Virus record (IMG/VR): IMGVR_UViG_3300027816_000051
Location: 224,261-288,260 of that record
Strand: one strand, 5' to 3'
DNA: 64,000 bases
A model generated the notes under the pieces. The model was not told the DNA's origin, ran no database searches, and saw only the letters and a list, made by a program, of their open reading frames with translations. Positions 428 through 46,188 of the stretch are shown here, in pieces. Both the position numbers and the translations under genes were made by a program. How positions within the stretch are numbered: the first letter of the stretch is position 1; each line of letters starts with the position of its first letter.

Positions 428-1081
428 TTACATATCACTTTCAGTCAATACCAAAAATTGTCTTGTTAGTGAAACGAATAATGTGTTATCTACAATTTTA
501 GGTAATACATCACTATCCACTTCTTCTGTGTTGAATTGAAACCAATCCTCTTGTTCGCCGTCTGCGTTTTCAAATTCGTGGTTCTCAACAACATCAGTAA
601 TCTTTTCCAATAATGTATCAGAAATCTGTTCTTCCTCATCATTGAGAATACAATCACCTTTGTAGTTAATTGAACTTCCGTCTTGACTGCCAACCAAATT
701 AAGGACTTTGGTTCTAATAAACTCAACCTCTTTTTCTGTGAGTTCAACAACAACTTCTTCTGTAAAACTCTCTGACCATTCCGCCTGTGCAGATTTGTAA
801 TACGAGAAAGTGGGGTTTTCCTCATCATCTTCATCAAGTGTAATCTCAACACTTCCAAATTCACCAATGTAGTGTCCGTCAGAGTTCACATAAAATTCTA
901 CTCTACGGAAAACATCATCATCAAAGAAACTATCAAGTTCACCACTCTCAACATCTTTGTTTTCTGAATTGTAAAAATTAAAGTGATAATCATTCATACT
1001 ATCACCACCACAACTAAATTCCATAGTTGCGCTTGTAATACCTAACTCTTTCCAGAGTGCGATTGCTTCATTAGTTTGCAT
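428..1081 (-). CDS. Acidic protein, DUF6878-like
   Basis: GITSATMEFSCGGDS resembles the DUF6878 N-terminus; overlaps the stop of the DUF6915-like gene. Confidence 0.6.
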   Translation of the reverse strand: MQTNEAIALWKELGITSATMEFSCGGDSMNDYHFNFYNSENKDVESGELDSFFDDDVFRRVEFYVNSDGHYIGEFGSVEITLDEDDEENPTFSYYKSAQAEWSESFTEEVVVELTEKEVEFIRTKVLNLVGSQDGSSINYKGDCILNDEEEQISDTLLEKITDVVENHEFENADGEQEDWFQFNTEEVDSDVLPKIVDNTLFVSLTRQFLVLTESDM

Positions 1082-1475
1082 ATTCGTGGATTTTTTGGTT
1101 TAATTGTTTAACTACTTCGTACGCTTCGGGGTTGTCTAAATCTTTTACCCCATTACACATCCAGGGTTGAACCTCTAAATGTTTAAGGTAATCTTGTGGG
1201 GTTGGAACGAACTTCATTCTAAAATCTTCTGCGATATGTAACATCGCAATATCAACAACATCAACTGACTTACCATCACTATTAGTAATGTTGTAACCGA
1301 AGATTTTTGGAATGATAGTGTATGCGAACCAAGTGTTGTGGGTGAGTAACCGAGAACTATTATTGTTCATTGTCGCTTTCGGACTATCAATAAGTTCGTG
1401 GATAGGTAAATAATCTTCTACCTTACCACCCCAACGCTTGACGCTGCTCTTTGAGTGAATTAGTGGGTTCGCCAT
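1071..1475 (-). CDS. DUF6915-like protein
   Basis: MANPLIHSKSSVKRWGGKVEDYLPIHELID...HIAED; start moved to ATG 1475. Confidence 0.7.
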   Translation of the reverse strand: MANPLIHSKSSVKRWGGKVEDYLPIHELIDSPKATMNNNSSRLLTHNTWFAYTIIPKIFGYNITNSDGKSVDVVDIAMLHIAEDFRMKFVPTPQDYLKHLEVQPWMCNGVKDLDNPEAYEVVKQLNQKIHEYAN

Positions 1476-1477
1476 AG

Positions 1478-1756
1478 TTAATCCCAAATTTGAGTGATAG
1501 TACCTTCAAACGGATTGTACTCAACTTGTTTTCCCATAACCCAATCACCTTGCTCAACTTTGAGTGGTTTGTGTTCGTTTGAGAAACTTCCATCGGGTTG
1601 TTCGTGTCTTAATACACTATCCTTTCTAACTTCAACTTCTGCGAAATCTGTTTGTGTTTCATCAACAATGAAATCACCATACAGAGTGTGCTGGTTAACA
1701 CCCTCACCCTTTAAGAGTGTGTGTTTTTTCTTCGGAGTTACTTTCTTGTTTTTCAT
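1478..1756 (-). CDS. Small conserved phage protein (GE..H / HE...EH / Q.EY family)
   Basis: LKGEGVNQH...LRHE...EHKPL...KQVEYNP...WD; first gene after promoter 1777-1784. Confidence 0.65.
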   Translation of the reverse strand: MKNKKVTPKKKHTLLKGEGVNQHTLYGDFIVDETQTDFAEVEVRKDSVLRHEQPDGSFSNEHKPLKVEQGDWVMGKQVEYNPFEGTITQIWD

Positions 1757-1859
1757 TTTTAGATTGTTTTATGGTACAAATATAAATCTATTTTTTGTAT
1801 AAGTGAATTTTTTTTTTATTTTTTTCGCCAAACAAAAATCACCCGTGAAGGTGATTTCG

Positions 1860-2081
1860 TCATTCGTTTCGTACAATATCTAATAGGTCATTCACAATTT
1901 CTTTTTTGGTTAATGAAAGAAGTTGATTACCTCTGAACGACAACAACTTAAAGGTATTCATTCCTTTAATACCTTTTTCACCCTCTACATAGTAATCCAT
2001 TTTCCACTTACCCAAATACTTAACATTCCCTATGTGTTTTACATAGTAGACATTACCGATAGTTAGTTTTTCTAAAACCAT
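1860..2081 (-). CDS. Hypothetical protein
   Basis: Start moved to ATG 2081 (MVLEKL), downstream of promoter 2100-2107; terminator follows. Confidence 0.7.
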   Translation of the reverse strand: MVLEKLTIGNVYYVKHIGNVKYLGKWKMDYYVEGEKGIKGMNTFKLLSFRGNQLLSLTKKEIVNDLLDIVRNE

Positions 2082-2203
2082 ATAAATTAATTTAGAACAC
2101 AAATATAAATCTATATTTTGTATAATCCAAATTTATTTTTATATTTCTTGCCAAACAAAAGTTATCCTGTGCTGCATCATCACCATCTTGGATACTTATT
2201 ATT

Positions 2204-2335
2204 ATGATAGAAGGGATACTTTATACATTAGGAGTTGAGTTCGTATTAGTCATTATATTGTTTTGTTATGAGTTAAGAAGACAACTAAAAGAAGATTATC
2301 AAGAGAAACCATTTAGATTCTGGGAAGATACATGA
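2204..2335 (+). CDS. 43-aa single-TM membrane peptide
   Basis: MIEGILYTLGVEFVLVIILFCYELRRQLKEDYQEKPFRFWEDT*; preceded by ATACTTATT, similar to RTATTTAT. Confidence 0.5.
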   Translation: MIEGILYTLGVEFVLVIILFCYELRRQLKEDYQEKPFRFWEDT

Positions 2336-2516
2336 ACATCTCCTGGTTGCGCGCAGCCCTCGATTTTGGTTGGCTCGAACCCAAAGTATTGATTTTATTG
2401 GGTTTAGAGTTTGCCAAACAATTTTCACTGTTTGCGCGTAGCTCACCATCAACTTTGGAGCAATAAAAAACCCCACATTTCTGTGGGGTTCTTATTAATT
2501 GAGTACCTAACCAATC

Positions 2517-3371
2517 TTAAACCAACTCAACCAATTCTTTGAAAATTTGACGTTCCCTTTGTCCATAGGTTCCAAACATCTTGTTTTCAGAGTTATCACC
2601 TTTACTTAAGGAATGTGTGGTGTACTTAGTAACCCCACTGAACAATCCCCAAAGGTTATCACCTTTCTCTTTTACTTCACCATTAAGGTCTACGTAGAAA
2701 CGAGAAAGACGATTACGAGTCACGGTCGACACATCTTTGTCACTATTCAAATCAACATCTTTCATGATATTGAACAATGTACGTGTAACCCAATCCTCTT
2801 GTTTCTTGGTCATCTTCGTTTCAGAAAGTTTCTTAATGTCTTCGAACATTTCTTTTTCTTCCACGAGTACCCCCTCCAAACCACGACAGATATCATCGAT
2901 TCTCATCTCCATGTTTTTGGTGTGACGAATTTTCGCATTCAAGTTACGGAACGCTGCGAAGAATGAATTCTGACAACTGATTGTAATATTACTTGGACCG
3001 AATGCCAAACTAGTTGACCCATCGAAGGAATTCACACCAGTGATGAAACCCTCAACTCTGTCATTGCCCAATTTCAAATCATTTGATTTCAATTGAAGGT
3101 ATACTTTCTCACCCCCACCAAAGTAACCACCTTTGTGAATTGGTAAACCAACCTGTTGAGATACCTTGTCTAGTAAATCAACCATCTGATGATTTTGATA
3201 AGGAAAGTAACCATCACCATGTACAGACAAAACAGTGTTTGTGTCCTCACGGATGATTGCTTTACTCTTAGGAACAATGATACCACTTTCTGTAGTGATA
3301 CTTTCTTCTCTTACGGTCCAATTTAGGCCGACTTTGTTGAGAACTTGCTGTGTGCGATTTTCTTGTGACAT
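2517..3371 (-). CDS. DUF932 (phage/plasmid-like TIGR03299-type) protein
   Basis: GLNWTV, Y.PYQN, NSFDGS, ISCQN, IRHTKN, NLWGLFSGVTKYTTH motifs; start moved to 3371. Confidence 0.85.
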   Translation of the reverse strand: MSQENRTQQVLNKVGLNWTVREESITTESGIIVPKSKAIIREDTNTVLSVHGDGYFPYQNHQMVDLLDKVSQQVGLPIHKGGYFGGGEKVYLQLKSNDLKLGNDRVEGFITGVNSFDGSTSLAFGPSNITISCQNSFFAAFRNLNAKIRHTKNMEMRIDDICRGLEGVLVEEKEMFEDIKKLSETKMTKKQEDWVTRTLFNIMKDVDLNSDKDVSTVTRNRLSRFYVDLNGEVKEKGDNLWGLFSGVTKYTTHSLSKGDNSENKMFGTYGQRERQIFKELVELV

Positions 3372-3633
3372 ATGGATGTTTTTTAATTTGATACAAATGT
3401 AATACACTTTTCATTATAATCCAAATAAATCTTTATTTTTTTTTTCTGACCCCAGAATTCACCGTACCATCTCAGAAATTGGTTGGCATCTGTCATACAC
3501 CCGCCAAACTAAATTGAACACGGGATTTGCCGGCGACGAATTTTTTTAGCAAACAAAAAACCCCCACATTTCTGTGAGGGTTCCTTAACCAAATAAAACT
3601 AATCTATGAACGACAAATCAAGTGTATTACACT

Positions 3634-3774
3634 TTAACCAAATATAGGAATTAAAACAAACATTGTCAATAGGAAAAACATAAGTATTACAATGCCACCC
3701 AAAATTCCATCCCAAAATTCCTTTCGGTCTTCTTGGTAAACTTCTTTGAAAGTTGAAAACATTTCCTTTAACAT
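3634..3774 (-). CDS. 46-aa membrane peptide
   Basis: MLKEMFS...GILGGIVILMFFLLTMFVLIPIFG; starts right after the upstream stop. Confidence 0.6.
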   Translation of the reverse strand: MLKEMFSTFKEVYQEDRKEFWDGILGGIVILMFFLLTMFVLIPIFG

Positions 3775-3775
3775 A

Positions 3776-4135
3776 TCAATAATTGTTTTGATTATCGTAG
3801 TTGTCTCGGTAAACTCTTTTACGAGGTTGGTTGGTTCGTTGACCATTCCAATGGCGGTCTCCATTACCACCATTTTCGTAGTATGAGTTATTAATCATTT
3901 CATCAACCGATGGAACTTCAAAGTCCATATCACAACTTCCATTCATCATCTTCCACTGAATTTCATAAATGGTTTTAATGTCTTCTTCAACATTGACATA
4001 TGTACCATCTATGTATTCAATCTTCGTTGCTATCTTGTCGTTTCTTTTATCCAAGATACTAAAAATGTTTTTGACATTTTGTAGATTGACAAGTGTTGGG
4101 GTTCCTTTACCTTGATAAGTGAGTTTAATTAACAT
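3776..4135 (-). CDS. Hypothetical protein, weak FlbD-like N-terminus
   Basis: MLIKLT...LVN...TKIEYIDGTYVNVEEDIKTI; own promoter 4159-4166. Confidence 0.6.
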   Translation of the reverse strand: MLIKLTYQGKGTPTLVNLQNVKNIFSILDKRNDKIATKIEYIDGTYVNVEEDIKTIYEIQWKMMNGSCDMDFEVPSVDEMINNSYYENGGNGDRHWNGQRTNQPRKRVYRDNYDNQNNY

Positions 4136-4228
4136 TTTTTGTTTTTTTAATTATTGGACAAATATACAAATGAATTTTTGGAATATACAAACGATTGTGC
4201 CAATCAAAATCGGCGGTTCACCATCTCC

Positions 4229-4474
4229 TCAGATATTTCCCGAAAAGACAAGAAAATTGTTGGGTGGTAAATAAGTGTCGGGAGTGTCAATGATTTCATA
4301 TTCATCTTCACCCTCAACTACACCAAGAGTCCTACCACTATCCCAACGGACATTGATAACACCATGACCAACATGATAAATTGTTCCCATTGAACCTTCC
4401 TCAACGGGGTTAGGGTCGTTCTCCATTGAAACGAGACGAATTCTTTTTCCGATTAATTTTTCGTTTATTTTCAT
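4229..4474 (-). CDS. DUF4314 domain protein
   Basis: GKRIRLVSMENDPNPVEEGSMGTI...VRWDSGRTLGVVEGED. Confidence 0.8.
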   Translation of the reverse strand: MKINEKLIGKRIRLVSMENDPNPVEEGSMGTIYHVGHGVINVRWDSGRTLGVVEGEDEYEIIDTPDTYLPPNNFLVFSGNI

Positions 4475-4549
4475 ATCTGTATTAGTTTATTAATACAAAT
4501 ATACAACTTATTTTATGATATCCAAATTTTTTTTAGGATATTTTGCCAA

Positions 4550-4855
4550 TCAAATTGATGTCAATCTGAATATTCGTTTGAACTCTTTTTCAATTCTTCT
4601 GAATCTTATTTCGTCTTTTTCTCTAACATAACGCGATATTGTTTTGTTAAATTGAAAGTTAGAACGAGTAAGAAGATAGATAAATTTTCTCCTCTCCACT
4701 TTGTGACCTTCAAAGTTGTATGCCCATTCAACATCAACCGAAATATAATTTTCAGTTTCAATGATGTCACACACTTTACCTTCTTTTTCCGATTTTTTTA
4801 GGTAGTTCATTACTTCCTCATCGGTATTCAATGATATGTCGTTATAGTTTTTCAT
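4550..4855 (-). CDS. Hypothetical protein, possibly leaderless mRNA
   Basis: ATG 4855 lies 5 nt from the -7 box at 4860-4867. Confidence 0.65.
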   Translation of the reverse strand: MKNYNDISLNTDEEVMNYLKKSEKEGKVCDIIETENYISVDVEWAYNFEGHKVERRKFIYLLTRSNFQFNKTISRYVREKDEIRFRRIEKEFKRIFRLTSI

Positions 4856-5090
4856 AATACAAATATACAATTCATTTTATGATATCCAAATTTATTTTAA
4901 AATATCCAATAACACCATCTACTGTTTCACCCGGCGTCGTAAAAATTTTGGTTGGCTGACCACATAAAACACTTAAATATAATAGGTTATCCGCCAAACA
5001 AAATCCCCACCAGGCGTGGGCTGGGCGAATTCTGGTATAAAAAAAAATCCCCGACTTTCGCCGAGGACTTTTCACCTAACCAAACAAAAT

Positions 5091-5498
5091 CTATTCGTAT
5101 TCTTCTGCGTACAATTCACCCGTGAGGTACATGTCGTAAGTTTTTACTTCACCCTCCAACACTTCGGTTACTTTGTCAATAAGACTTTGGGTAATTTTCT
5201 TTACTCCATATTCTTCACGGACTTTCTTCTTTGAAACAAAGTACCAACCAACTTGTCCACTATCCCAACGACAACTGAACGGACTTGTGTTCATTGTAAT
5301 TCCCGAGTGGTCGTACAAGTAAAGAGGTAAGATAACACAAACATCTTCTTCTTTGATGATTGCGTTTTTCATTTCTTCCCAACCATTGTAGTTATTGTGG
5401 TTGTAGTCGTGTTTGTCTCCAAGGTCGTAACGTCCGTGAAAACACACCATTTTTCCGAGGTTGTCCCAACTCCGTGGGTTGTCAAAATCTTGATACAT
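5091..5498 (-). CDS. Conserved phage/mobile-element hypothetical protein
   Basis: NPRSWDNLGKMVCFH...LPLYLYDHSGITM...WDSGQVGW; own promoter and terminator. Confidence 0.75.
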   Translation of the reverse strand: MYQDFDNPRSWDNLGKMVCFHGRYDLGDKHDYNHNNYNGWEEMKNAIIKEEDVCVILPLYLYDHSGITMNTSPFSCRWDSGQVGWYFVSKKKVREEYGVKKITQSLIDKVTEVLEGEVKTYDMYLTGELYAEEYE

Positions 5499-5539
5499 AG
5501 TCGTTATTATTTATTGGTTTATACAAATATATAACAATT

Positions 5540-5698
5540 TTATTCGTTTACCAAATCTTTTTTGCCAAACTTTATTCGTCTGTACGCCTTCGCCGAAGGT
5601 TTCGACTTCTGTAACATTTTCCTACGGACTATTTGTGCGACGTGTCTCACACTTAATCCATTAAGGGTTTCATTCTTCATAGTTAAATTCGGTTTCAT
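5540..5698 (-). CDS. Small basic protein
   Basis: Not in track; (MKPNLT)MKNETLNGLSVRHVAQIVRRKMLQKSKPSAKAYRRIKFGKKDLVNE*; alternative start 5680. Confidence 0.55.
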   Translation of the reverse strand: MKPNLTMKNETLNGLSVRHVAQIVRRKMLQKSKPSAKAYRRIKFGKKDLVNE

Positions 5699-5831
5699 CT
5701 TCTATTTCTTTAAGTTTTTGTTCAAACTCATTTCTCATTTCATCGGTATCAAAGATTGGTTGTTTAGTTTCATCATCAATGTAATAGTAAACACCGACTT
5801 TGATTTCCGTTGGGATTGATTTCTTACTCAT
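5670..5831 (-). CDS. 53-aa acidic protein
   Basis: Not in track; MSKKSIPTEIKVGVYYYIDDETKQPIFDTDEMRNEFEQKLKEIEDETEFNYEE*; promoter 5852-5859. Confidence 0.7.
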   Translation of the reverse strand: MSKKSIPTEIKVGVYYYIDDETKQPIFDTDEMRNEFEQKLKEIEDETEFNYEE

Positions 5832-6107
5832 AGTAATTATGTATTACGATACAAATATAAAACTATATTCAGTATAATCCAAATTTTTTTTCATACCTGT
5901 CGTCTCCATCCCACAAATTGTTTGGCGTGTTGTTTAATGTTTTGACCGAAAGATTAAACAAAACATATAGTGTAATACGCCTTTATTGAGTGTCATACAG
6001 TGCCAACCAAATTTAGGATACAGCACGTGCTGTGAGGTGAAACTAAAACGCAACAAAAAAGGGTAACATTTCTGCTACCCTTTTCCACCGCAACCGAGTT
6101 AAACCAA

Positions 6108-6656
6108 TTAAATCGACAAGTACAGGCGGTTGTGGTTGTATAGTGCGACTGGGTTTTCTTCCGCAATCTTACCATATTCCTTTTTAATGATTTCGTACAT
6201 TCTATCTTGTGGTTCGTTAATACACTCCGATAAAAGTTCACAAAAACCATAGTTACTTTCATCAACTACTTCTTGTTCGGTACCAGGTAAACCACAATAG
6301 TACGCTTCCCCTACTTCGGAAATAAACATTCCCGAATAAAAACCTTTCAACTTAAAGTGATTAACGAATTTGTCCGCGTTACACCAAATAAAAATTGAAT
6401 TGTCTTTTTCTTTTAATAGGTACACCATACTTTCATCAATGATGAAACCATTTGAACCAGGAAATTGTCCAACCGAGAACAATCCCATAGGTGCTCCGTG
6501 TCCACACATTATTACTCTGTCGTGGGCGTCGATAAGTTTTCTAACTTCTTCTTTTGTTACCCCACCCGTGATAATTGTCTTATTCGGTATAGGTTCGTAC
6601 ACAATATCTAAAAATTGTGTCGATTTGTCTTTTGGATGAATTACAAGTGTTTTCAT
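6108..6656 (-). CDS. Hypothetical protein with caspase/gingipain-like His-Gly...Cys motifs
   Basis: VIMCGHG and IFIWCNA; start moved to 6656. Confidence 0.55.
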   Translation of the reverse strand: MKTLVIHPKDKSTQFLDIVYEPIPNKTIITGGVTKEEVRKLIDAHDRVIMCGHGAPMGLFSVGQFPGSNGFIIDESMVYLLKEKDNSIFIWCNADKFVNHFKLKGFYSGMFISEVGEAYYCGLPGTEQEVVDESNYGFCELLSECINEPQDRMYEIIKKEYGKIAEENPVALYNHNRLYLSI

Positions 6657-6926
6657 TATTTTGTCGATTTTATGATACAAAGATATAACGAGTTTTTTAT
6701 TCTACCAAATTTATTTTTATTTTTCTTGCCAACTAACCAAATAGTAACTTACCATTCGGTAACATCTCAGAACCGCTGCGTCGGGAAAATTTTGGTTGGC
6801 GTTCTTACAATCTGTAAAGTAAAAACCTACTAATCTGTAAAGTGGATGCCAAACAATTTTCACCCTGAACCGTGACTCAGGACTTCAGGTCATAAAAAAA
6901 CCCCAACTTTCGTTGAGGTCTTGTCT

Positions 6927-7139
6927 TTACTCTTCTTCACTATCCCGAAAAATTTGAATCGCTTCGTTGAACAATTCATTCTGTAATTGAAATAGTGTAT
7001 ATCCACTCTTAATACATTCATCTACCCAATCATTATCACCTTCAAAAATTCCTTCCCAACTTCTATTCGGTGGTAAACCCATTTCGTTTTCGGTTTGAAT
7101 ATGTTGGTAAATTAAACCAACAACTTCTTGTCTTGTCAT
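6927..7139 (-). CDS. Hypothetical protein
   Basis: Start 7139 (MTRQEV) after promoter 7162-7169; flanked by direct repeats at 6848 and 7212. Confidence 0.7.
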   Translation of the reverse strand: MTRQEVVGLIYQHIQTENEMGLPPNRSWEGIFEGDNDWVDECIKSGYTLFQLQNELFNEAIQIFRDSEEE

Positions 7140-7292
7140 TTTAATTAGTTTTGGTGAAACACAAAGATAAAACATTTTTTCGTATAATCCAAATTTTTTT
7201 ATATCTTTCTTGCCAACCAATTTTCACCCTGAACCGTGACTCAAGTTCTTCAGGTCATAAAAAAACCCCCACCTTTCGGTGAGGGTTCGTTG

Positions 7293-7595
7293 TTAAAAAA
7301 CTTCGGGTTCAAACTCAATTTGTGGGATACCCAATAGTTCGTAATCATCAAATTCCCCCCAATCGGGTTCATTGAAATAACGAAAACGGACATCCATAGT
7401 TCCATCTTCGTTCCACCAAATACGGACTTGGGTTCGGTGGTCGGAAATAAAAAACCCTTCAAGTTGTTCCAACTTCTCAATTAGAGGTTGAACATCCGAA
7501 TCGTCAATAGTTACTTCTTCGTTATTAACGAGGAAATCATCAACACATTCACAATTACCATCGTAGTCGATAGAGAAATCAATGTACTTTTCCAT
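7293..7595 (-). CDS. Highly acidic hypothetical protein
   Basis: Own promoter and terminator; D/E-rich. Confidence 0.75.
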   Translation of the reverse strand: MEKYIDFSIDYDGNCECVDDFLVNNEEVTIDDSDVQPLIEKLEQLEGFFISDHRTQVRIWWNEDGTMDVRFRYFNEPDWGEFDDYELLGIPQIEFEPEVF

Positions 7596-7884
7596 TTTGT
7601 TTTTTTTGTTTTATTGGTTTAACAATACAAATATAAATCAAATTTTAATATACACAACATTTGAGTATATTTTTTTTTATCTATTTTGCCAAACTACCAC
7701 GAAACAGATGACCACCTGTCGTCAAATCCGAAAAATTGTTTGGCGTAGGTGTAATACAATGTATGATAGTGTCATACAACGCCAACCAAAATTCCGAGCT
7801 GCAACTGTGCAGCTCCACTGCACACATCCGAGCAAAAAAAATCCCCGACTTTCGCCGAGGACTTTCCACCTAACTAAACCAAAC

Positions 7885-8259
7885 CTAATATGAACCAAAC
7901 CTTTCTTTTAACGCCACGTCAAACGCGGACATAAATGTTACTTGTTCTTTGACTTCTTCAAGTGAAAGTTTGGTATCACCATTTTCACCCGTTTCATCAT
8001 CGTAACCCATTATCAACCCATTACCCGATAGAGGTTGTCGGTAATTTTTCAACTTGAAAAACTTTGTGTTTTCATCAACACTCATTATACCTTCTTCATC
8101 AACATACACATCGTTTTCGTTGTTGTAACTAACAATCTCAAAAATAGAACACTTTAAGTGTCCATAGATACTTGGTAACTGACTACCAGTTTCATCACGA
8201 ACAACTTCAACTTCGGAAATTGTTTTGTTTTCTACGTCGATTAAAATTCCTCTTGACAT
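7885..8259 (-). CDS. DUF3846 domain protein
   Basis: VYVDEEG...LSGNGLIMGYD..GE. Confidence 0.75.
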   Translation of the reverse strand: MSRGILIDVENKTISEVEVVRDETGSQLPSIYGHLKCSIFEIVSYNNENDVYVDEEGIMSVDENTKFFKLKNYRQPLSGNGLIMGYDDETGENGDTKLSLEEVKEQVTFMSAFDVALKERFGSY

Positions 8260-8354
8260 TTCTTTTTTGTTTTATTGGTTTAACGATACAAATATAATAC
8301 TATTTCTTTTATATTCCAAATCTTTTTTTGCCAATCAAATTCCAACATCTCCCG

Positions 8355-8570
8355 TCAGGAGGTCAGGTATTTCTTGTCTTTGACAAATTTGAGGTGTCTA
8401 CATTCCTCAATAGTCAATCCCACAAATTCGTTGGGAGTGAAACTGATTTCATCGGGATAGTAGTCGAACAAAAATTCTTCTTGTCCATTTTCCATTGTAA
8501 CCCACACTTGGGGCATCGGGTCGAACAAACTCTTTGGTTGTTCCGTAATACGAGATGAGATAACTTTCAT
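8355..8570 (-). CDS. Hypothetical protein
   Basis: LFDYYPDEISFTPNEFVGLT; promoter 8596-8603. Confidence 0.75.
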   Translation of the reverse strand: MKVISSRITEQPKSLFDPMPQVWVTMENGQEEFLFDYYPDEISFTPNEFVGLTIEECRHLKFVKDKKYLTS

Positions 8571-8838
8571 GATTTTGTCTATTGGTTTAACTATACAAAT
8601 ATAAAACTATTTTTCTTATATACCAAATTTATTTTTATTTTTCTCAGAACCGTCGTCCGTATCCAAAAATTGGTTGGCGTAGGTGTAATACGATACTCAC
8701 TATTTGTCATACGGCGCCAAACAATTTTCCTTCAGGGCCCTGACTCAAGTCCTGAAATGTTCACCTTATCAATAAGGGAAACAAATAAAAAACCCCCACC
8801 ATTACTGATGAGGGTTAGTCTGAACCAACAAACTAAAT

Positions 8839-9243
8839 TCAATTTAAACAAAGATTTTTCATAAGGTCGGAAACTTGGTAAGGTTTATAAAAATCAAAAA
8901 CCTCTTGATGTTTTTCATCGGTTACAAAATTGTGGAACTCAACATTCAAAACGCCCTTGTCAAAGGTTGTTTCAACACTACACAAAATTTCGTGTCCATC
9001 CCTTTCAATGATTTGTGGAACAACTCGGTCGTACACCATTCTACCGATTGGGTCGTTTGGTACTGGTCCACCACCAACACCATACTCGGTTTCCCCTTCT
9101 TCGTTTACTTTTTTCAAAAGGTACATTTTTACATTGGGTACACTATCGTTTGTTCCCAACATTTCTTCGGTACTCACTTTTGCGGAGTGTGTCATTCCTT
9201 GAATAAAATCTCTGATTTCTTCAATGTCTTTGTAATTGTTCAT
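8839..9243 (-). CDS. Hypothetical protein
   Basis: Start moved to 9243 (MNNYKD); promoter 9273-9280. Confidence 0.7.
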   Translation of the reverse strand: MNNYKDIEEIRDFIQGMTHSAKVSTEEMLGTNDSVPNVKMYLLKKVNEEGETEYGVGGGPVPNDPIGRMVYDRVVPQIIERDGHEILCSVETTFDKGVLNVEFHNFVTDEKHQEVFDFYKPYQVSDLMKNLCLN

Positions 9244-9513
9244 ACTTGTTCTTTTTATTTGGTTTAACAATACGAATATAATATGATTAAACGGATATTC
9301 CAAATAAATTTATATTTTTTTTGCCAACTTACGATACAAGATGTCGAGGGACAGAAGACGGATTTTGATTTTTGGTTGGCGAGCGTAATACGATAATACC
9401 AATGTGTAATACCCCGCCAAACAATTTTCTACGCTGCTCAAATCCACCACAGAACCTCGTGTAAATAAAAAACCCCCAACTTTCGTTGAGGGTTAATTAC
9501 CATTTTGGAATTT

Positions 9514-9720
9514 TTAGAACCTTTGAGGTTGTGGTTTCTTTTTACTCTTGATGTAATTTTTGATGTCCTCAAACAAAATGATAAAGAACATACCAATACC
9601 CATACAAGAAAATAAGAACATACCCATTTGATTGTCTACGGGAATATCCCAAGTTAATGATACCCACATTGAGTAAACAATGAACCCGATGATTGCGATG
9701 TAAGGAAATAACTTTTTCAT
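9514..9720 (-). CDS. Small 2-TM membrane protein
   Basis: Two hydrophobic segments, basic C-tail; own promoter and terminator. Confidence 0.75.
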   Translation of the reverse strand: MKKLFPYIAIIGFIVYSMWVSLTWDIPVDNQMGMFLFSCMGIGMFFIILFEDIKNYIKSKKKPQPQRF

Positions 9721-9818
9721 AATTGTTTCTTTTGTTTGGTTTAACGATACAAATATAATATAAGTTTCAATATAAACAACATTTTTTTATATCTATTTTG
9801 CCAACTTGATAACACCAA

Positions 9819-10016
9819 CAACTTCTCCTTCGAGCAACAGCGCATGGTTGGAAATTAGATTGGCGGTTTTAGCAACACCTAAAGCATTTAGCAACTTCTC
9901 CTTCGAGCAATTGCGCATGAGGGAAATTAGATTGGCGGTTTTAGCAACACCTAAAGCATTTAGCAACTTCTCCTTCGAGCAATTGCGCATGAGGGAAATT
10001 AGATTGGCGGTTTTAG
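9819..10016. repeat. 72/73-bp tandem repeat, about 2.7 copies
   Basis: Units start at 9819, 9892, 9964 (caacttctccttcgagcaa...gaaattagattggcggttttag...); each carries a TTGGC box. Confidence 0.95.
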
Positions 10017-10219
10017 TCCGTGTCGGCGCATTTGCAACAAACTCGCCAAACAATATCTAACAGCGCAGCCCGGGTGAAATTCTGTTCCCAAATTTTTTCT
10101 TACTTTTTTTATTCGTTCCCGCCAAACAACATTCCCGATGGTTCACGGGGTTCGGAAAATTTCACACACAAAAAAAGGGGATACTTTCGTACCCCCTTCG
10201 GTTTTTCTTTCGGTGTGTG

Positions 10220-10783
10220 TTACTCCTTTACAATTTCGTACCTATCTCCGTTTACCGAAATTTCAAGTACATTGTCAAGGTCGGGTGTTATCGGTTTAAC
10301 CTCTCTATCCAAACCTTGTTTTTCGTTACTACTCTTTCTATCACTTATCCACTTTTCAAACAATGTTTTGTCTATTGAGTTACCACGAAATTCGTACTCC
10401 GTTGTTCCTTTGATTTCGGGAAACCACTCTACCATAAGGTAGGTTTTTGTTTCGGTGTCGGTGTCAGTCAGTAATGATTTACTGATATGTTTTTTACCCG
10501 TTGGACTTTCAACCTTAAAGGTGTTCGGGTCTTTACCCTCTTTCATAAGGTTGTTGTGTACCCTCTTTTCGTAGTCAGTTACCAAACGATAAGTTTTAGA
10601 TGATACCTTAAAGATTTCCTTATAGTAAGGGTTTAATTCTTTGGTGTCCTTTGTCTTTTGTAAAACTTCTTTGTAAAGGGTTTTCATTTTTACCCCTACA
10701 AAAGTGTTAGGACTTTTTTCCTCAATCTCTTTGATGATACTGATGATTTCGGACTTCGTTACTTTTTTGATTTCTTTGTTCAT
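10220..10783 (-). CDS. Lys-rich hypothetical protein
   Basis: Start moved to 10783 (MNKEIK); promoter 10814-10821. Confidence 0.75.
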   Translation of the reverse strand: MNKEIKKVTKSEIISIIKEIEEKSPNTFVGVKMKTLYKEVLQKTKDTKELNPYYKEIFKVSSKTYRLVTDYEKRVHNNLMKEGKDPNTFKVESPTGKKHISKSLLTDTDTETKTYLMVEWFPEIKGTTEYEFRGNSIDKTLFEKWISDRKSSNEKQGLDREVKPITPDLDNVLEISVNGDRYEIVKE

Positions 10784-11044
10784 ACTTTTATTTTTTAGTT
10801 TGTTAGGAATACACAAATATAAAACACTATTTCATATAAACAAAACTTTTTTTTATTTATTTCGCCAGACTACCACGAACCCGATGACCACCTGTCGTCC
10901 GTATCCGAAAATTGGTTGGCGAGTCGGTGCAATTATGGTCTATTCGCCAATCAAATTTCCACCTGAACCATCTCCTCAAGTTCACACAAATCTTCTTGGA
11001 CAAAAAAAATCCCCACCTTTCGGTGAGGACTTTCGGTGTGGTGT

Positions 11045-11302
11045 TTAATCTTCTTCACCCTCTTCAATTCCCGACATTACAACTTCGGTCAAGTGATTAA
11101 CAAAGGTTTCGTACAACTTGTAATCCAACATAACCTTTTGTCTTGTGTGTACAAGGGTTACGTTCTTTTCGTTTTTTTCATCGTACAACTCATTTGTTAG
11201 GTCATTCGTGAAATCAGTACCATTCCACTCGTAGTCAATTTGGTTTGACAATAACTGGTCAATTTTACTTTTAACCAAGTTTTTAACTTTTTGTGTGTCC
11301 AT
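11045..11302 (-). CDS. Hypothetical protein
   Basis: Start 11302 (MDTQKV); promoter 11328-11335. Confidence 0.7.
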   Translation of the reverse strand: MDTQKVKNLVKSKIDQLLSNQIDYEWNGTDFTNDLTNELYDEKNEKNVTLVHTRQKVMLDYKLYETFVNHLTEVVMSGIEEGEED

Positions 11303-11409
11303 ATTTTTATTAATTGGTTTGTGGGTACAAAGATATAACAATTTTAAAATAATACAAGTGAAAGTTATTCACATCCTGAATGTGGATTTTGACCACCCTG
11401 AACCTGACG

Positions 11410-11680
11410 ACCCCCATCCCACAAATTGTTTGGCATACCCCCTATACCTACCCCCTCCCCTCAAACCATACCCCCCTCCCTCCCGTATCCCCCCTTAATA
11501 TAGGGTATTTTGGGTGTCTGTAGAGGGGGGACAATACCTTAACAGAAATTTTTCCGGAAAAAATCTGAAAAATCGGAAAGTACCCCCTTTTCTGAAAAAA
11601 AAATTTTGGGAAAAAATCTAAAAATCTGAAAAAAGGTCAAAAACCGTTTCTGGAATTTCCGGAAAATTTTTCAAAAAATT
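11410..11680. other. Non-coding boundary: C-tracts (G-quadruplex potential on minus), palindromes and phased A-tracts
   Basis: Seven C-runs in 11438-11494; TTTTTCCGGAAAAA at 11549-11562 and TTTCCGGAAA at 11656-11665; A-tracts at 11558, 11568, 11611, 11620, 11629, 11639. Confidence 0.8.
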
Positions 11681-11710
11681 TGGAATATTCAAAAAGATAT
11701 CATAACTTCG
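11679..11710 (+). promoter_or_regulatory. Bacteroidota-type promoter
   Basis: TTTG (11679)-N20-TAACTTCG (11703). Confidence 0.6.
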
Positions 11711-11732: not shown

Positions 11733-12350
11733 ATGAAAAAAGTTTTTTATTTATTACCACTCGTGGTATTCGTCACAATCGGAGCGGTCCTTTCATTTAC
11801 CACCGAGGGTCAAACAATCGTTCAACAGATAAAACCAAATAAGGTTATCTACATACAACCAATGGGTGATGTGAAACAAGAGTATTTGGAATTGGTAGAA
11901 AAGACCGTGGAATCTTTTTATGGTTTTGAATGTATTGTAAATCCTAAGGACCCTTTAACCAATAATCTTTTGGCCGAAAGTAAAACAAGGTATTCTGCCA
12001 ATAAGATACTAAGACAATATAGAGGGAAAGATAACTATCTAATTTTAACCGAGAAGGATATTGCAACACCAAGTCGTGGATATCCTGAATGGGGTGTGTT
12101 AGGATTGGGTTACAGACCTGGTAGTGTATGTGTGGTATCAACGTTCAGAATGAAACGTAATGTTAGTGTGGATGTAATTAAGGAGAGAATAAAAAAAGTG
12201 TCCATACATGAAGTTGGACACAATTTAGGTTTGGACCACTGTACAAATCATCCTGAATGTTTAATGAATGATGCCAATGGTACAATCAAACAAGTTGATA
12301 GAGAAAAGATGTGGTTGTGTGATAGATGTAAACAGATTATTGGTATGTAA
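11733..12350 (+). CDS. Archaemetzincin-like Zn metalloprotease (M54) with N-terminal signal/anchor
   Basis: HEVGHNLGLDHC...CLM...LCDRC; hydrophobic N-terminus. Confidence 0.85.
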   Translation: MKKVFYLLPLVVFVTIGAVLSFTTEGQTIVQQIKPNKVIYIQPMGDVKQEYLELVEKTVESFYGFECIVNPKDPLTNNLLAESKTRYSANKILRQYRGKDNYLILTEKDIATPSRGYPEWGVLGLGYRPGSVCVVSTFRMKRNVSVDVIKERIKKVSIHEVGHNLGLDHCTNHPECLMNDANGTIKQVDREKMWLCDRCKQIIGM

Positions 12351-41114: not shown

Positions 41115-42371
41115 ATGTCTGATAATGGAAAAATTTTTATACAGATGGCTGCGTACAGGGATAAAGAACTGTTACCAACACTTAGAGATTGTATAGAGAA
41201 AGCTAAACACCCCGAAAATCTTGTATTTTCAATTGCATGGCAACATTCACAAGATGATGAGTGGGATAATTTAGATGAATTTAAATGTGACCCTCGATTT
41301 AAAATAATCGATATTAATTATACAAAAGCTAAAGGACCTTGTTGGGCTAGATACATGTTACAGCAACAATATGGTGGTGAACAATATACATTACAATTGG
41401 ATTCCCATCATAGGTTTATTCAAAATTGGGATTCGGAGTTGATAGAGGAATTAACAAAATTACAAGACAAGGGTTATAAAAAACCCATGTTAACAGGATA
41501 TATTCCATCATACGAACCCGAAAATGAACCAAATGGTAGATTGAATGTTCCGTGGAAAATGAATTTTGATAGATTCAGTCCCGATGGTAACGTACATTTT
41601 TTACCATCATCAATCGATGATTTTAAAGAAAGAGTTGAACCTGTCAGGGCTAGATTTTATTCGGCACACTTTTGTTTTACACTTGGACAATTTGCATTAG
41701 AAGTACAACACGACCCTGATTATTATTTCCATGGTGAGGAAATATCAATTTCTGTTAGGGCATATACTCATGGGTACGACCTCTTTCATTTACATAGGGT
41801 GATTATATGGCACTACTACACAAGAAAAGGTTCAACAAAACAATGGGATGATGACCCTGTATGGCACAAAAGAAACGAATATAGTCACTATAAAAATAGA
41901 AAACTATTTGGAATGGAAGACGATGGGAATAGTATCGATTTTGGTGATTTCGGGTTTGGTAAAAACAGAACATTAGACCAATACGAAAGGTATGCGGGTA
42001 TTTCATTTAGTAAGAGAGCCATCCAAAAATTTACATTGGAATATAATCACCCGCCAAATCCACATATTGAGGACCAAGTTGAGTATGATAATTCGTTTAC
42101 ATTCCAATTTAAACATTGTATTGATGTGGGATTCCATGACGTTCCACATGATGACTACACATTTTGGGCTGTAGCATTTTTAGATGAAAATGATAATGAA
42201 ATTTTTAGACAAGATGCTGGTTCTGATGAAATTAAGAGAATGAAGAATGACCCTGATGGGTATTGTAAAATATGGAGGACGTTTGAAACGACCGTAAAAC
42301 CTCATAAATGGATTGTTTGGCCATGTTCCGAAAAACATGGGTTTGGTGAAAGATTAGAAGGAAAACTTTAA
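41115..42371 (+). CDS. GT60-like GlcNAc-transferase (Skp1 Gnt1-like)
   Basis: IFIQMAAYRD, GPCWAR, QLDSHHRF, FHGEEI, WHYY. Confidence 0.85.
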   Translation: MSDNGKIFIQMAAYRDKELLPTLRDCIEKAKHPENLVFSIAWQHSQDDEWDNLDEFKCDPRFKIIDINYTKAKGPCWARYMLQQQYGGEQYTLQLDSHHRFIQNWDSELIEELTKLQDKGYKKPMLTGYIPSYEPENEPNGRLNVPWKMNFDRFSPDGNVHFLPSSIDDFKERVEPVRARFYSAHFCFTLGQFALEVQHDPDYYFHGEEISISVRAYTHGYDLFHLHRVIIWHYYTRKGSTKQWDDDPVWHKRNEYSHYKNRKLFGMEDDGNSIDFGDFGFGKNRTLDQYERYAGISFSKRAIQKFTLEYNHPPNPHIEDQVEYDNSFTFQFKHCIDVGFHDVPHDDYTFWAVAFLDENDNEIFRQDAGSDEIKRMKNDPDGYCKIWRTFETTVKPHKWIVWPCSEKHGFGERLEGKL

Positions 42372-42381
42372 AATATAAAAT

Positions 42382-43647: not shown

Positions 43648-43657
43648 AAAAAAATAT

Positions 43658-46187: not shown

Positions 46188-46188
46188 A

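What the first reader, a model, noticed from the sequence alone, without database searches (positions are those of the whole stretch)
2360..10960. Ten inverted TTGGC...GCCAA pairs with quantised spacers and an inner TGT(A/C)ATAC double box
Seen: between cassettes, AAATT(G/T)GTTGGC-like and GCCAA(A/C/T)CAA-like arms face each other with spacers of 38 (2370/2413), 15 (3483/3503), 36 (4952/4993), 75 (5922/6002), 47 (6796/6848), 36 (7740/7781), 37 (8674/8716), 35 (9376/9416), 36 (10004/10045) and 25 bp (10916/10946), roughly 15+10.5n with 75 the worst fit. Several spacers hold a second motif as a direct pair 20-21 bp apart (5971/5991, 7750/7770, 8684/8705, 9384/9405; single at 3491; variant TGTAAAGT at 6813/6836), ending 3-4 bp before GCCAA. 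Inference: a composite two-protein site repeated roughly every kb, for DNA wrapping/looping, genome entry or anchoring, or site-specific recombination. A hairpin-RNA role is less favoured because spacer length tracks DNA pitch.
Basis: partly seen in the sequence, partly recalled or inferred. Interest (0 to 1): 0.8.

Follow-up and report, generated by a model that had tools for sequence, protein, structure and literature searches.

The report
Phased inverted repeats between phage cassettes
Between the small early genes of an uncultured freshwater jumbo phage sits a repeated DNA site: two inverted 12-base arms whose spacing follows the turn of the double helix. It is most likely a docking site for regulatory proteins, not an RNA hairpin, and it marks where gene cassettes are gained, lost and flipped.

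Summary
All ten TTGGC...GCCAA pairs lie at the stated coordinates (9 with 10-40 bp spacers against 0.35 expected), and the inner TGT(A/C)ATAC boxes are there too.

The window is a 32% GC jumbo phage (identical IMG/VR contigs up to 288 kb) with Bacteroidota-type promoters. Positions 1-11.4 kb are a minus-strand array of small gene cassettes, each with its own promoter, gene(s) and intrinsic terminator.

The arms are a 12-nt motif, A-W-W-T-T-G-K-TTGGC.
- The first arm lies 41-51 nt (once 66) after every one of the 11 terminators.
- A single copy lies 13, 23-24 or 34 nt upstream of the -33 box of many array promoters.

Across 42 unrelated spacer classes the lengths cluster at 4, 15, 25, 36, 46 and 76 bp (period about 10-10.5 bp, p about 1e-5). 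A lineage with different arms repeats 4/15/27. One lineage (20-22 bp) does not fit.

The arms show no compensatory change, the spacers do not fold, and Rfam finds nothing.

Sister lineages keep the layout but change the arm sequence. Spacers are inverted between orthologous loci, and cassette indels end at arms.

Best reading: phased protein-binding DNA operators, or architectural sites, of an early-cassette regulon. A ParB-fold protein encoded in the array is an untested candidate binder. The closest known analogues are PeSL cassettes, BIME-1 elements and KorB operators.

The parts
2361..2426 (.). Inverted pair 1 (TTGGC 2370 / GCCAA 2413, spacer 38). The spacer holds the class C core AATAAAATCAA-N3-TTT, which fits the IHF consensus.
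3474..3516 (.). Inverted pair 2 (spacer 15) with a single GTATGACA box at 3491-3498 (minus strand). The orthologous locus in relatives has spacers of 15, 25, 38 and 76.
4943..5006 (.). Inverted pair 3 (spacer 36). The spacer sequence is unique.
5913..6015 (.). Inverted pair 4 (spacer 75). Two boxes (5971, 5991) plus an inner AT-rich hairpin at about 5935-5965.
6787..6861 (.). Inverted pair 5 (spacer 47). Two CTTTACA boxes, 23 bp apart. The spacer is inverted in relative L143.
7731..7794 (.). Inverted pair 6 (spacer 36). Boxes at 7750 and 7770.
8665..8729 (.). Inverted pair 7 (spacer 37). Boxes at 8684 and 8705.
9367..9429 (.). Inverted pair 8 (spacer 35). Boxes at 9384 (variant) and 9405.
9995..10058 (.). 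Inverted pair 9 (spacer 36, unique spacer). A further arm lies at 10121-10125, 44 nt after the terminator.
10907..10959 (.). Inverted pair 10 (spacer 25, unique spacer). Its left arm is one breakpoint of a cassette indel.
1827..1831 (-). Promoter-proximal single arm, read on the minus strand as ..TTGGCGAAAA. Further copies have their GCCAA at 2150, 4199, 4545, 5564, 6728, 7212, 7688, 8330, 9323 and 9800, and a CTGGC variant lies at about 10862. Each sits 12-14 or 22-24 nt upstream of the -33 TTTG.
7212..7221 (-). One arm that is both the terminator-coupled arm (42 nt after the T-run) and the promoter-proximal arm. This is the minimal form of the intergenic module, with no second arm.
11425..11434 (+). 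Solitary arm at the head of the array, next to the C-rich tract. It is the second breakpoint of the 10922/11435 cassette indel.
2465..2488 (-). Intrinsic terminator (GC hairpin plus T6-9). Ten more lie at 3555-3580, 5039-5067, 6055-6080, 6894-6918, 7259-7285, 7834-7861, 8787-8814, 9467-9492, 10170-10196 and 11002-11029. Each is followed by an arm 41-51 nt after its T-run (once 66).
8590..8627 (-). Example of the Bacteroidota-type promoter (TTTG, about 20 nt, TAnnTTTG) that heads each cassette. In all, 12 regex matches on the minus strand in 1-11.45 kb have their -33 box at 2159, 3425, 4191, 4526, 4890, 5555, 5883, 6709, 7193, 8320, 8627 and 10844.
9819..10016 (.). 72-bp tandem repeat, 2.7 copies. 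Each unit carries an arm (TTAGATTGGCGG).
428..11341 (-). Array of about 20 small genes (53-284 aa, mostly acidic; DUF6915, DUF932, DUF4314, DUF3846) arranged as cassettes of promoter, gene(s) and terminator.

Best explanation
The pairs are double-stranded-DNA protein-binding sites that belong to a repeated intergenic control module of the phage's early-gene cassette array.

Each arm is a 12-nt recognition motif (A-W-W-T-T-G-K-TTGGC) for a sequence-specific DNA-binding protein. That protein is probably phage-encoded and specific to the lineage. In its minimal form the two arms make an ordinary palindromic operator with a 4-bp centre. In the expanded forms, whole helical turns are inserted (4 + about 10.5n bp), so both arms stay on the same face of the helix and one protein multimer can still hold both.

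The inserted DNA carries sites for a second factor that bends or bridges it: GTATKACA boxes at a 21-bp pitch, CTTTACA boxes, or a site matching the IHF consensus.

One arm is fixed about 45 bp behind each terminator. Another copy sits 13, 24 or 34 bp upstream of the -33 box of the next promoter. The bound complex therefore marks each cassette boundary. Most likely it sets or shuts off the whole promoter class together, acting as an auxiliary operator and insulator, much as the KorB operators do across plasmid RK2.

Because the same short motifs recur at every boundary, they also serve as portable homology where cassettes are gained, lost and flipped.

Shown here: motif, positions, phasing, absence of RNA-type covariation, lineage-specific arm replacement, and recombination footprints.
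Inferred: protein binding, the identity of the protein, and the direction of regulation.
For: Sequence, not pairing, is conserved. The arm logo from 57 elements is the same on both sides. At the variable arm positions, complementarity equals random re-pairing (6.78 against 6.91 +/- 0.18, 67 elements). RNAalifold gives a covariation term of +0.31, and the arm pairs never vary. Spacers fold no better than shuffles, except class C and one inner hairpin. Rfam finds no family.

Position. Every one of the 11 intrinsic terminators is followed by an arm at 41-51 nt (one at 66). The same holds for 44 of 57 elements in six loci and again in L027 and L180. The single promoter-side copy lies 12-14, 22-24 or 33-36 nt from the -33 box, at 65 of the 67 promoters that carry a copy. 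It is present at 6-8 of the 12 array promoters in the window and at 0 of 8 promoter-like matches elsewhere.

Helical register. Spacers fall at 4, 14-15, 23-28, 31-38, 44-47, 72-77 bp in 42 unrelated spacer clusters, with R about 0.5 at P = 10-10.5 and p about 1e-5. One orthologous locus shows 15, 25, 38 and 76 in different phages. Lineage L180, which has different arms (TTGTTSGGC), has 4, 15 and 27, and L185 has 4 and 4.

Specificity changes by lineage within the same layout: TTGGC, TTGATTGGC, TTGTTSGGC, TTATTSGGC and TTACTGGG arms.

The element is phage-specific. A scan of 185,579 species genomes gave only chance hits.

Second factor. The class C core is conserved at exactly the specified positions of WATCAANNNNTTR and varies at the N positions. 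A similar site occurs in L183.

Candidate binder. A ParB/Srx-fold protein with a GxxRxxA motif is encoded in the array in the window's clade and in L180, L183 and L185.
Against: No binding experiment exists, and no DNA-binding protein has been tied to the motif.

The ParB-fold family is large and also sits in replication modules of small Flavobacterium phages that lack such repeats.

Lineage L027 has four single-box spacers of 20-22 bp, out of register. The non-window lineages alone (n = 11) do not reach significance.

The quantisation could arise from the modular make-up of the spacer (box units of about 10.5 or 21 bp) rather than from selection on helical face.

The distances from the distal arms to the promoter, and from the second arm to the promoter-side arm, show no clear 10.5-bp periodicity.

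The fixed 45-bp distance from the terminator has no ready explanation in an operator model.

Four of the 12 window promoters lack the promoter-side arm.

A protein that bridges half-sites 15-120 bp apart is unusual for a simple dimer.
Confidence: 0.5

Rival explanations
1. The arms are crossover sites of a dedicated cassette-exchange system, comparable to an integron or a transposon. An unidentified recombinase or HUH enzyme recognises the arms and moves promoter-gene-terminator cassettes between phages. The element exists for mobility, not for regulation.
For: - Cassette indels between the window and its relatives end at arms or at promoter-side arms.
- The 10922/11435 indel shares only the 12-nt arm as homology. 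It is seen both in L016 and in an independent contig.
- Contigs from four sequencing runs show several alternative cassette junctions.
- Spacers are inverted at three orthologous loci.
- The inner box contains GTATTAC/TTAC, reminiscent of HUH nick sites. This resemblance is recalled from memory and is a lead only.
Against: - No integrase, serine recombinase, transposase or HUH protein turned up among the array proteins or 33 further ORFs.
- Most indel junctions lie inside 50-70 nt of repeated promoter or terminator sequence, as expected for ordinary homologous recombination.
- Spacers of 4-47 bp are too short for intramolecular synapsis. Small hairpin-loop inversions happen without any recombinase.
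- The helical register of the arms and the fixed distances to terminator and -33 box are not expected for crossover sites.
- Spacers are not self-complementary, unlike attC sites.
Confidence: 0.13
2. The element works as a nucleic-acid hairpin. One version is RNA in read-through transcripts, acting as a back-up terminator, a 3' stabiliser or a processing site. The other is an extruded DNA cruciform.
For: - The arms can pair: the whole elements fold with z-scores of about -2 to -5.
- The arm is T-rich and in compact intergenic regions directly follows a GC hairpin like a terminator U-tract.
- The 30 nt before the first arm are GC-rich and fold somewhat better than shuffles (-5.9 against -4.4 kcal/mol).
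- Contigs in RNA-library runs run from a gene across its terminator into pair 4.
- Spacer flips are typical of hairpin loops.
Against: - The arms show no compensatory substitutions. The K position is complementary no more often than by chance, and positions -5/-6 are anti-correlated.
- RNAalifold finds no covariation.
- Loops of 15-120 nt with no internal structure.
- The flank beyond the second arm folds no better than shuffles.
- Loop length has no reason to follow a 10.5-nt period.
- The element lies after a strong terminator and before the next promoter.
- The same motif works as a single copy beside promoters.
- Rfam finds nothing.
Confidence: 0.08
3. The pairs are selfish or neutral mosaic repeats of the REP/BIME/REPIN or MITE kind. 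They spread within the array and are kept alike by gene conversion, with no function for the phage.
For: - Two inverted units around a spacer that in one class fits the IHF consensus, at the 3' end of transcription units, as in BIME-1 (PMC2817692).
- The arms are heterotypic: X pairs with Y.
- Several spacer families share the same arms.
- Solo arms exist.
Against: - The arms are 12-nt non-palindromic motifs, not about 35-nt GC-rich palindromes.
- No RAYT or transposase was found.
- There are no copies in cellular genomes.
- The layout, with its fixed distances, is kept in phages whose shared proteins are only 44-78% identical, while the arm sequence itself is replaced. That points to selection.
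- No target-site duplications were seen.
Confidence: 0.08

Closest known systems
PeSL regulatory cassettes (promoter-early stem-loop) of T4-type phages (PMC2839356, PMC4122927)
   Same: Both are repeated composite terminator-plus-strong-host-promoter modules between small non-essential genes in a hyperplastic region. In both, indels and replacements between close relatives are bounded by the modules, which act as portable homology.
   Different: This is a different phage group with a Bacteroidota-type promoter. The module here is about 200 bp and holds extra conserved parts that PeSLs lack: the phased inverted arms, the inner boxes, and a promoter-upstream arm. Mini-circles were not tested.
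BIME-1 / RIB elements of enterobacteria (two inverted REPs around an IHF site; PMC2817692)
   Same: Both have two inverted units separated by a short motif that binds, or here fits the consensus of, IHF. Both lie at the 3' end of transcription units, use heterotypic units, and have a mosaic make-up.
   Different: The units here are 12-nt non-palindromic arms, not REP hairpins. Only one of about six spacer classes has the IHF-like site. The elements are confined to one phage gene array, are absent from cellular genomes, and have no RAYT.
KorB (ParB family) operators OB with KorA operators OA on plasmid RK2 (PMC11790492)
   Same: Both have about a dozen copies of a T-rich...A-rich palindrome spread over a mobile element's genome, beside and at a distance from promoters. 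Both have a second motif for a partner protein. A ParB-fold gene is encoded in the same array here.
   Different: OB is a contiguous 13-bp palindrome, whereas here the halves are split by 4 to about 120 bp. Binding, CTP dependence and a partner protein are all untested, and the ParB-fold protein is only a candidate.
Cooperative operators separated by integral helical turns (lambda CI, Lac/Gal/AraC loops; own knowledge; minimal lac loops, PMC3001091) and P1 parS (two box types around an IHF bend; own knowledge)
   Same: The relative helical face of two sites is preserved while their distance varies. A bending site lies between the arms.
   Different: Those systems have one or a few sites per genome, and the phasing was shown by experiment. 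Here it is a natural series of more than 40 elements with no known protein.
Integron attC sites
   Same: Both are imperfect inverted repeats of variable length that separate gene cassettes.
   Different: The core sequence differs, the spacers are not self-complementary, the cassettes carry their own promoters and terminators, and no IntI was found.

Membership tests
PeSL-type regulatory cassette | A strong host-type early promoter combined with a stem-loop terminator in one short intergenic module | tested here: met
   11 intrinsic terminators (dG -9 to -15 kcal/mol, T6-9) and 12 TTTG-N19-21-TAnnTTTG promoters alternate on the minus strand. The promoter consensus is that of flavobacterial sigma-A (PMC9723704).
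PeSL-type regulatory cassette | Lies in a hyperplastic region of small ORFan genes; indels between close relatives are bounded by the modules | tested here: met
   Cassettes at 1860-2102, 4550-4855, 6927-7151 and 11045-11341 are present or absent between the window and L013/L016, with junctions in the repeated modules. Alternative junctions occur in four sequencing runs.
PeSL-type regulatory cassette | Member of the T4-type phages; formation of encapsidated mini-circles | not testable with these tools
   No T4-like core genes were seen in the window. Mini-circles need PCR on virion DNA.
BIME-1 / REP | Each unit is a GC-rich imperfect palindrome of about 35 nt | tested here: not met
   The arms are a 12-nt non-palindromic motif. 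The GC-rich flanks fold only slightly better than shuffles (first flank) or no better (second flank).
BIME-1 / REP | The sequence between the units binds IHF | tested here: inconclusive
   The class C core fits WATCAANNNNTTR in 11 of 11 copies at WATCAA and varies at the N positions. Other spacer classes lack it. Binding was not tested, and the host's IHF/HU specificity is unknown.
BIME-1 / REP | High copy number over a cellular chromosome, with an associated RAYT transposase | tested here: not met
   Only chance matches among 185,579 species genomes. No IS200/RAYT-like protein in the ORFs scanned. The rest of the phage genome was not seen.
Integron attC | Conserved R''/R' core (RYYYAAC / GTTRRRY) and a self-complementary, foldable bottom strand | tested here: not met
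   The arms are TTGGC/GCCAA. Spacer z-scores are around 0.
Integron attC | An adjacent IntI integrase with attI; promoterless cassettes | tested here: not met
   No integrase in the window or flanks. Every cassette has its own promoter.
ParB/KorB-type operator (parS / OB) | A cognate ParB-family protein encoded by the same element | tested here: inconclusive
   A 251-aa protein with a ParB/Srx-type N-domain lies in the array. Matches: GmrSD_N 1.3e-4; parB_part 5e-3; family members hit ParB_N 2e-5; a PDB profile search hits ParB 4UMK at 7e-4, plus SbnI, Srx and Noc. The model has pLDDT 96.6. No link to the arms has been shown.
ParB/KorB-type operator (parS / OB) | A contiguous 13-16 bp palindrome bound by one dimer | tested here: not met
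   Only the minimal form (4-bp centre; L138:17470, L180 x3, L185 x2) is a contiguous palindrome. All ten window copies are split by 15-75 bp.
Structured RNA / intrinsic terminator | Base pairs kept by compensatory change; the element lies inside a transcript | tested here: not met
Phased cooperative operators | Site-to-site distance restricted to whole helical turns | tested here: met
   Exception: L027, with 20-22 bp.
Phased cooperative operators | A protein that binds the sites cooperatively | not testable with these tools
   Needs EMSA, footprinting or ChIP.

The most novel reading that the evidence does not exclude
The array could be run by a phage version of the KorB/KorA logic. A ParB-fold, possibly CTP-dependent, protein would load at split parS-like half-sites that are kept in helical register. 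A second protein on the GTATKAC boxes, or an IHF-like bend, would hold it in place. Together they would silence and insulate a dozen strong early promoters of an anti-defence-like cassette array. The same sites would serve as the joints at which cassettes are exchanged between jumbo phages. That would be a combined regulatory and cassette-shuffling platform not yet described for any phage.
Probability: 0.15. Interest if true: 0.85.

Novelty: new variant of a known kind. Interest (0 to 1): 0.62.

Why it matters
Early regions of large phages are where host-takeover and anti-defence genes turn over fastest. How dozens of independent cassettes are switched together and exchanged is known only for T4-type phages (PeSLs).

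This study finds a more elaborate intergenic module shared by several lineages of uncultured freshwater Bacteroidota phages. The module offers three things:
- A natural allelic series of more than 40 operators whose half-site distance varies by whole helical turns. That is a ready-made test bed for DNA bridging or looping by a still unknown protein.
- Lineage-specific arm sequences, which should allow the binding protein to be found by co-variation.
- Defined boundaries for predicting cassette units and early promoters in metagenomic phage genomes.

If the ParB-fold protein is the binder, it would extend ParB/KorB-type global silencing to phages.

Tried and rejected
**Searches that found nothing useful**
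- Megablast of the region against 50,697 GenBank phage records: no match.
- Rfam on the whole window: nothing.
- A loose pattern scan of viral contigs returned mostly single chance hits. Only L027, L035, L073, L110 and L121 were relevant.
- The exact-pattern scan of GTDB genomes gave 23 loci, all chance, so the element is not a host repeat family.
- Literature searches for such repeats in Bacteroidota or jumbo phages, and for the DUF combination, found nothing.

**Read and contig data**
- Contigs from four RNA-library runs came from related strains with different cassette neighbours. Coverage is gene-centred and asymmetric around gene 6108-6656, but contig ends cannot be read as RNA ends. No further read-laying run was available.

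**Ideas tested and dropped**
- "Two convergent terminators", each a GC hairpin plus a T-rich arm. The first flank folds only modestly better than shuffles and the second not at all.
- Helical phasing of the distal arms relative to the promoter, and of the second arm relative to the promoter-side arm: not significant.
- The attC-like reading.
- A small ORF starting at the conserved ATGTCC after the terminators: not conserved.
- Resemblances of the box to T7-type promoters, Zur/Fur boxes and the CRESS nonanucleotide were judged coincidental and not pursued.

**Protein annotation**
- Pfam, PHROGs and NCBIfam on 30 array proteins and 33 further ORFs found no HTH regulator, recombinase, HUH enzyme or HU/IHF.
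- The protein atlas gave nothing for the two basic array proteins.

Full report
**What the window is.**
The window is 32% GC. Positions 1-11.4 kb carry about 20 small genes, all on the minus strand. The rest holds larger genes, including a cluster of glycosyl- and methyl-transferases.
It has no near match among GenBank phages. It is 100% identical to parts of several IMG/VR viral contigs of 81-288 kb. It is 67-95% identical to other contigs. So it is an uncultured jumbo phage recovered repeatedly.
Upstream of each small gene lies TTTG, about 20 nt, then TAnnTTTG. This is the sigma-A promoter form of Flavobacteria/Bacteroidota (PMC9723704 read). No Shine-Dalgarno sequence is present.
The closest cultured relatives of one array protein are Flavobacterium phages. 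The host is therefore most likely a member of the Bacteroidota.

**Check of the observation.**
All ten pairs are at the stated places with the stated spacers.
- The pattern TTGGC-N10-40-GCCAA occurs 9 times against 0.35 expected. The hit at 11970 is a chance match inside a gene.
- The extended arm occurs 16 times against 1.4 expected, with 12 copies in the array.
- The inner box occurs 15 times against 6.1 expected, with 8 copies inside pairs.
- Box spacing (20-21 bp) and the 3-4 bp gap to GCCAA are as described.
- Two more pairs lie just beyond the window's left end.

**Anatomy of the intergenic module, read in the direction of the genes (minus strand).**
An alignment of eleven intergenic regions and the catalogue from related loci give this order:
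1. A strong intrinsic terminator.
2. A GC-rich linker of about 45 nt.
3. Arm 1.
4. The spacer.
5. Arm 2, inverted.
6. A GC-rich linker, often 47 nt.
7. A third, single arm copy ending in TTGGCAAaAA.
8. An A-rich stretch.
9. The -33 and -7 boxes.
10. The gene.

Both arms have the same 12-nt logo, A-W-W-T-T-G-K-TTGGC (57 elements).

All 11 terminators of the window's array are followed by an arm 41-51 nt after the T-run, with one at 66. In six loci, 44 of 57 elements obey this rule. The linker sequence is not conserved, and it is 50-60% GC in a 32% GC genome. The same distance of about 45 nt is seen in the separate lineages L027 and L180.

The promoter-side copy lies 12-14, 22-24 or 33-36 nt upstream of the -33 box. 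This holds at 65 of the 67 promoters that have a copy. In the window, 6-8 of the 12 array promoters have the copy, and none of 8 promoter-like matches elsewhere do. These steps of about 10.5 nt go with repeated A-tract units of about 10-11 nt.

In the shortest modules a single arm serves both roles, for example at 7212-7221.

**DNA site or RNA hairpin.**
The element lies after a strong terminator and before the next promoter. Five further results bear on the question:
- Rfam finds nothing.
- The spacers fold no better than shuffles. The exceptions are class C and one inner hairpin in pair 4.
- In 67 distinct elements, the variable arm positions are complementary between the two arms no more often than after random re-pairing (6.78 against 6.91 +/- 0.18).
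- Positions -5/-6 are anti-correlated: an AAAATTGT-type arm tends to sit opposite an ATTTTGG-type arm.
- RNAalifold on nine class A elements gives a covariation term of +0.31, and the arm pairs never vary.

Contigs from four RNA-library runs come from related strains. They cover mainly the genes, and they cover the region downstream of gene 6108-6656 more than the region upstream. Their ends coincide with strain rearrangements, so they cannot be read as transcript ends.
Together these results favour recognition of a double-stranded sequence by a protein.

**Spacer length.**
I clustered the 67 elements of six loci by spacer sequence, which gave 42 unrelated clusters.
- Their lengths are 4, 14-15, 23-28, 31-38, 44-47, 63, 72-77, 85 and 112-120 bp.
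- The Rayleigh statistic peaks at a period of 10-10.5 bp (R about 0.5, p about 1e-5).
- At least five unrelated spacer sequences share 36 +/- 1.5 bp.
- At the single orthologous locus upstream of the DUF932 gene, different phages have 15, 15, 76, 25, 38 and 15 bp.
- L180 has different arms and unrelated spacers and shows 4 (x3), 15 (x5) and 27 bp. L185 shows 4 and 4. L183 shows 35.
- Pooling all lineages keeps the signal, with the same phase of about 4 bp.

The exception is L027, which has four single-box spacers of 20-22 bp. The non-window lineages alone are too few to be significant.

The minimal 4-bp form is an ordinary palindromic operator, for example TTGTTCGGCAATTGCCCAACAA in L180.

Part of the quantisation may reflect how the spacer is built. 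No box gives 4 bp, one box gives 15, and two boxes give 36. In the sister clade the figures are 4-8 without a box and 16-17 with one.

**Spacer content.**
- Class A holds GTATGACA and then GTATTACA, 21 bp apart. The first box is 3-4 bp after arm 1.
- Class B holds two CTTTACA boxes 23 bp apart.
- Class C holds AATAAAATCAA-N3-TTT. This fits the IHF consensus WATCAANNNNTTR (own knowledge). It is invariant at the specified positions and variable at the N positions in 11 copies. A similar site sits beside a box in L183.
- The other spacers are unique sequences.

**Evolution.**
The same layout occurs in lineages whose shared DUF932 protein is 64-78% identical to the window's. The arm sequence differs between them:

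| Arm form | Locus |
|---|---|
| TTGATTGGC | L145 |
| TTGTTSGGC | L180 |
| TTATTSGGC | L183 |
| TTATTTGGC | L185 |
| TTACTGGG / CCCAGTAA | sister clade L147-L152 |

The sister-clade arms include those at the orthologous DUF932 locus and at the head of the array. The GTATKAC box is kept in all of these lineages.

Spacers are inverted between orthologous loci three times, while the flanks stay colinear. Identity is 0.72-0.85 in reverse orientation against 0.53-0.57 forward.

Cassettes differ between close relatives, and the junctions lie in the repeated modules. In most cases 50-70 nt of promoter or terminator homology overlaps the junction. The 10922/11435 indel is different: it shares only the 12-nt arm.

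No related element exists in 185,579 species genomes.

**Candidate proteins.**
Sixteen of the 20 array proteins in the window are acidic. Their Pfam hits are DUF6915, DUF932, DUF4314 and DUF3846. Array genes just beyond the window's left end add gp88, L5 gp82-like and SprT-like. No HTH regulator, recombinase, HUH enzyme or HU/IHF was found in these proteins or in 33 further ORFs.

One gene in the same array encodes a 251-aa protein with a ParB/Srx-type N-terminal domain and a GxxRxxA motif. It lies 2.6-3.4 kb beyond the window's left end, at L138:15977-16729. The evidence for the domain is:
- Pfam and NCBIfam matches.
- Family members hit ParB_N.
- A profile search of PDB sequences hits ParB, SbnI, sulfiredoxin and Noc.
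- The family has more than 5,000 members.
- The model is confident (pLDDT 96.6) and has an all-helical C-terminal part.

The gene is present in the window's clade and in L180, L183 and L185, all of which have GGC-type arms. It was not seen in the 20 kb fetched from the clade with TTACTGGG arms. The same family also sits in the replication module of small Flavobacterium phages that have no such repeats. Structure comparison was not available. The protein is a candidate and no more.

**Most likely mechanism.**
Shown:
- A 12-nt motif conserved as sequence.
- Its three fixed positions: about 45 nt after the terminator; inverted partner at 4 + about 10.5n bp; single copy at about 13, 24 or 34 nt before the -33 box.
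- A second conserved box or an IHF-like site between the arms.
- Replacement of the arm sequence by lineage.
- Recombination footprints.

Inferred:
- A lineage-specific DNA-binding protein recognises the arms.
- The two inverted arms are held by one multimer on one face of the helix.
- The intervening DNA is bent or bridged by a second factor.
- The complex at each cassette boundary, together with the promoter-side copy, controls the whole promoter class in concert and insulates neighbouring cassettes. I think timed shut-off of strong early promoters is the most likely effect. Activation is not excluded.
- The repeated motifs also act as short portable homology for cassette gain, loss and spacer flipping.

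I put this reading at about 0.5, and the ParB-fold protein as the binder at about 0.2.

**Comparison with known systems.**
- As a whole cassette boundary, the element works like the PeSLs of T4-type phages (PMC2839356, PMC4122927). It carries extra conserved parts that PeSLs lack.
- The pair itself resembles BIME-1/RIB in having two inverted units around an IHF site at the 3' ends of transcription units (PMC2817692). It fails the REP-hairpin, copy-number and RAYT tests.
- The distribution of a T-rich...A-rich palindrome beside and away from promoters, with a second motif and a ParB-fold gene, recalls KorB/OB with KorA/OA on RK2 (PMC11790492). The split halves are unlike OB.
- The whole-turn spacing recalls cooperative operators at integral turns and P1 parS (own knowledge; PMC3001091).
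- It is not attC-like.

**Novelty and limits.**
I found no description of such repeats. I rate the element a new variant of a known kind: repeated regulatory cassette boundaries that carry operator-like sites.

The limits are these:
- There is no experiment and no cultured host.
- Only about 85 kb of a 230-290 kb genome was seen.
- Orthologous elements are not fully independent in the statistics, although clustering by spacer sequence reduces this.
- One lineage (L027) is out of register.

Noticed in passing
window 11435-11530 (and L145 about 3700-3830, L148 about 1300-1400): A C-rich tract (G-rich on the gene strand, with G4-like runs) lies at the head of the array. In the gene direction it is followed directly by a solitary arm of the lineage's own type and by the first array promoter. 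This arrangement is conserved in three lineages whose arms differ.
   Followed up: partly
window 11540-11700: A non-coding stretch between the array and the divergent plus-strand gene 11733-12350 (M54-like metallopeptidase). It holds short repeats (GGAAAAAATCTGAAAAATCGGAAA) and a palindrome (TTTCTGGAATTTCCGGAAA). A similar stretch occurs in L145.
   Followed up: no
window 9819-10016: A 72-bp tandem repeat, 2.7 copies at 96% identity, with an arm in each unit. Copy number differs between contigs, and several IMG/VR contigs of the same phage end here. This looks like an assembly break at the repeat.
   Followed up: partly
L138:15977-16729 (= L121:7355-8107), 2.6-3.4 kb left of the window: A ParB/Srx-fold protein (DGQHR / GxxRxxA motif) is encoded inside the cassette array. 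Its own upstream region has an arm plus a separate perfect palindrome, AGAATACTAGTATTCT, and a GTCATAC box.
   Followed up: partly
window 428-11341: Sixteen of the 20 array proteins are acidic (pI 4.1-5.8). The families (DUF932, DUF4314, DUF3846, DUF6915, and upstream gp88, L5 gp82-like, SprT-like) are ones I recall from leading regions of conjugative elements and from actinophage early regions. That would fit host-takeover or anti-defence roles.
   Followed up: partly
window 41115-57488: A plus-strand cluster of glycosyltransferases (two PF11397 GlcNAc-type), a HAD hydrolase/nucleotidyl-transferase fusion, and a 790-aa TylF-methyltransferase/HtrL/GT2 fusion. Possibly glycan or DNA modification.
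   Followed up: no
terminator hairpins, e.g. window 7259-7285, 9467-9492; L148 9700-9760: The terminator stems are near-identical between cassettes and between lineages (CCCTCA-N2-GAAA-N2-TGGGGG with a GAAA-type loop). Many are followed by ATGTCCAAGAA-like sequence right after the T-run.
   Followed up: no
L027 (2100, 4000), window 3398-3405, L148 DUF932 promoter: The GTATTAC / GTCATAC box also turns up in terminator loops (L027) and at or next to the -7 box and transcription start of some promoters.
   Followed up: no
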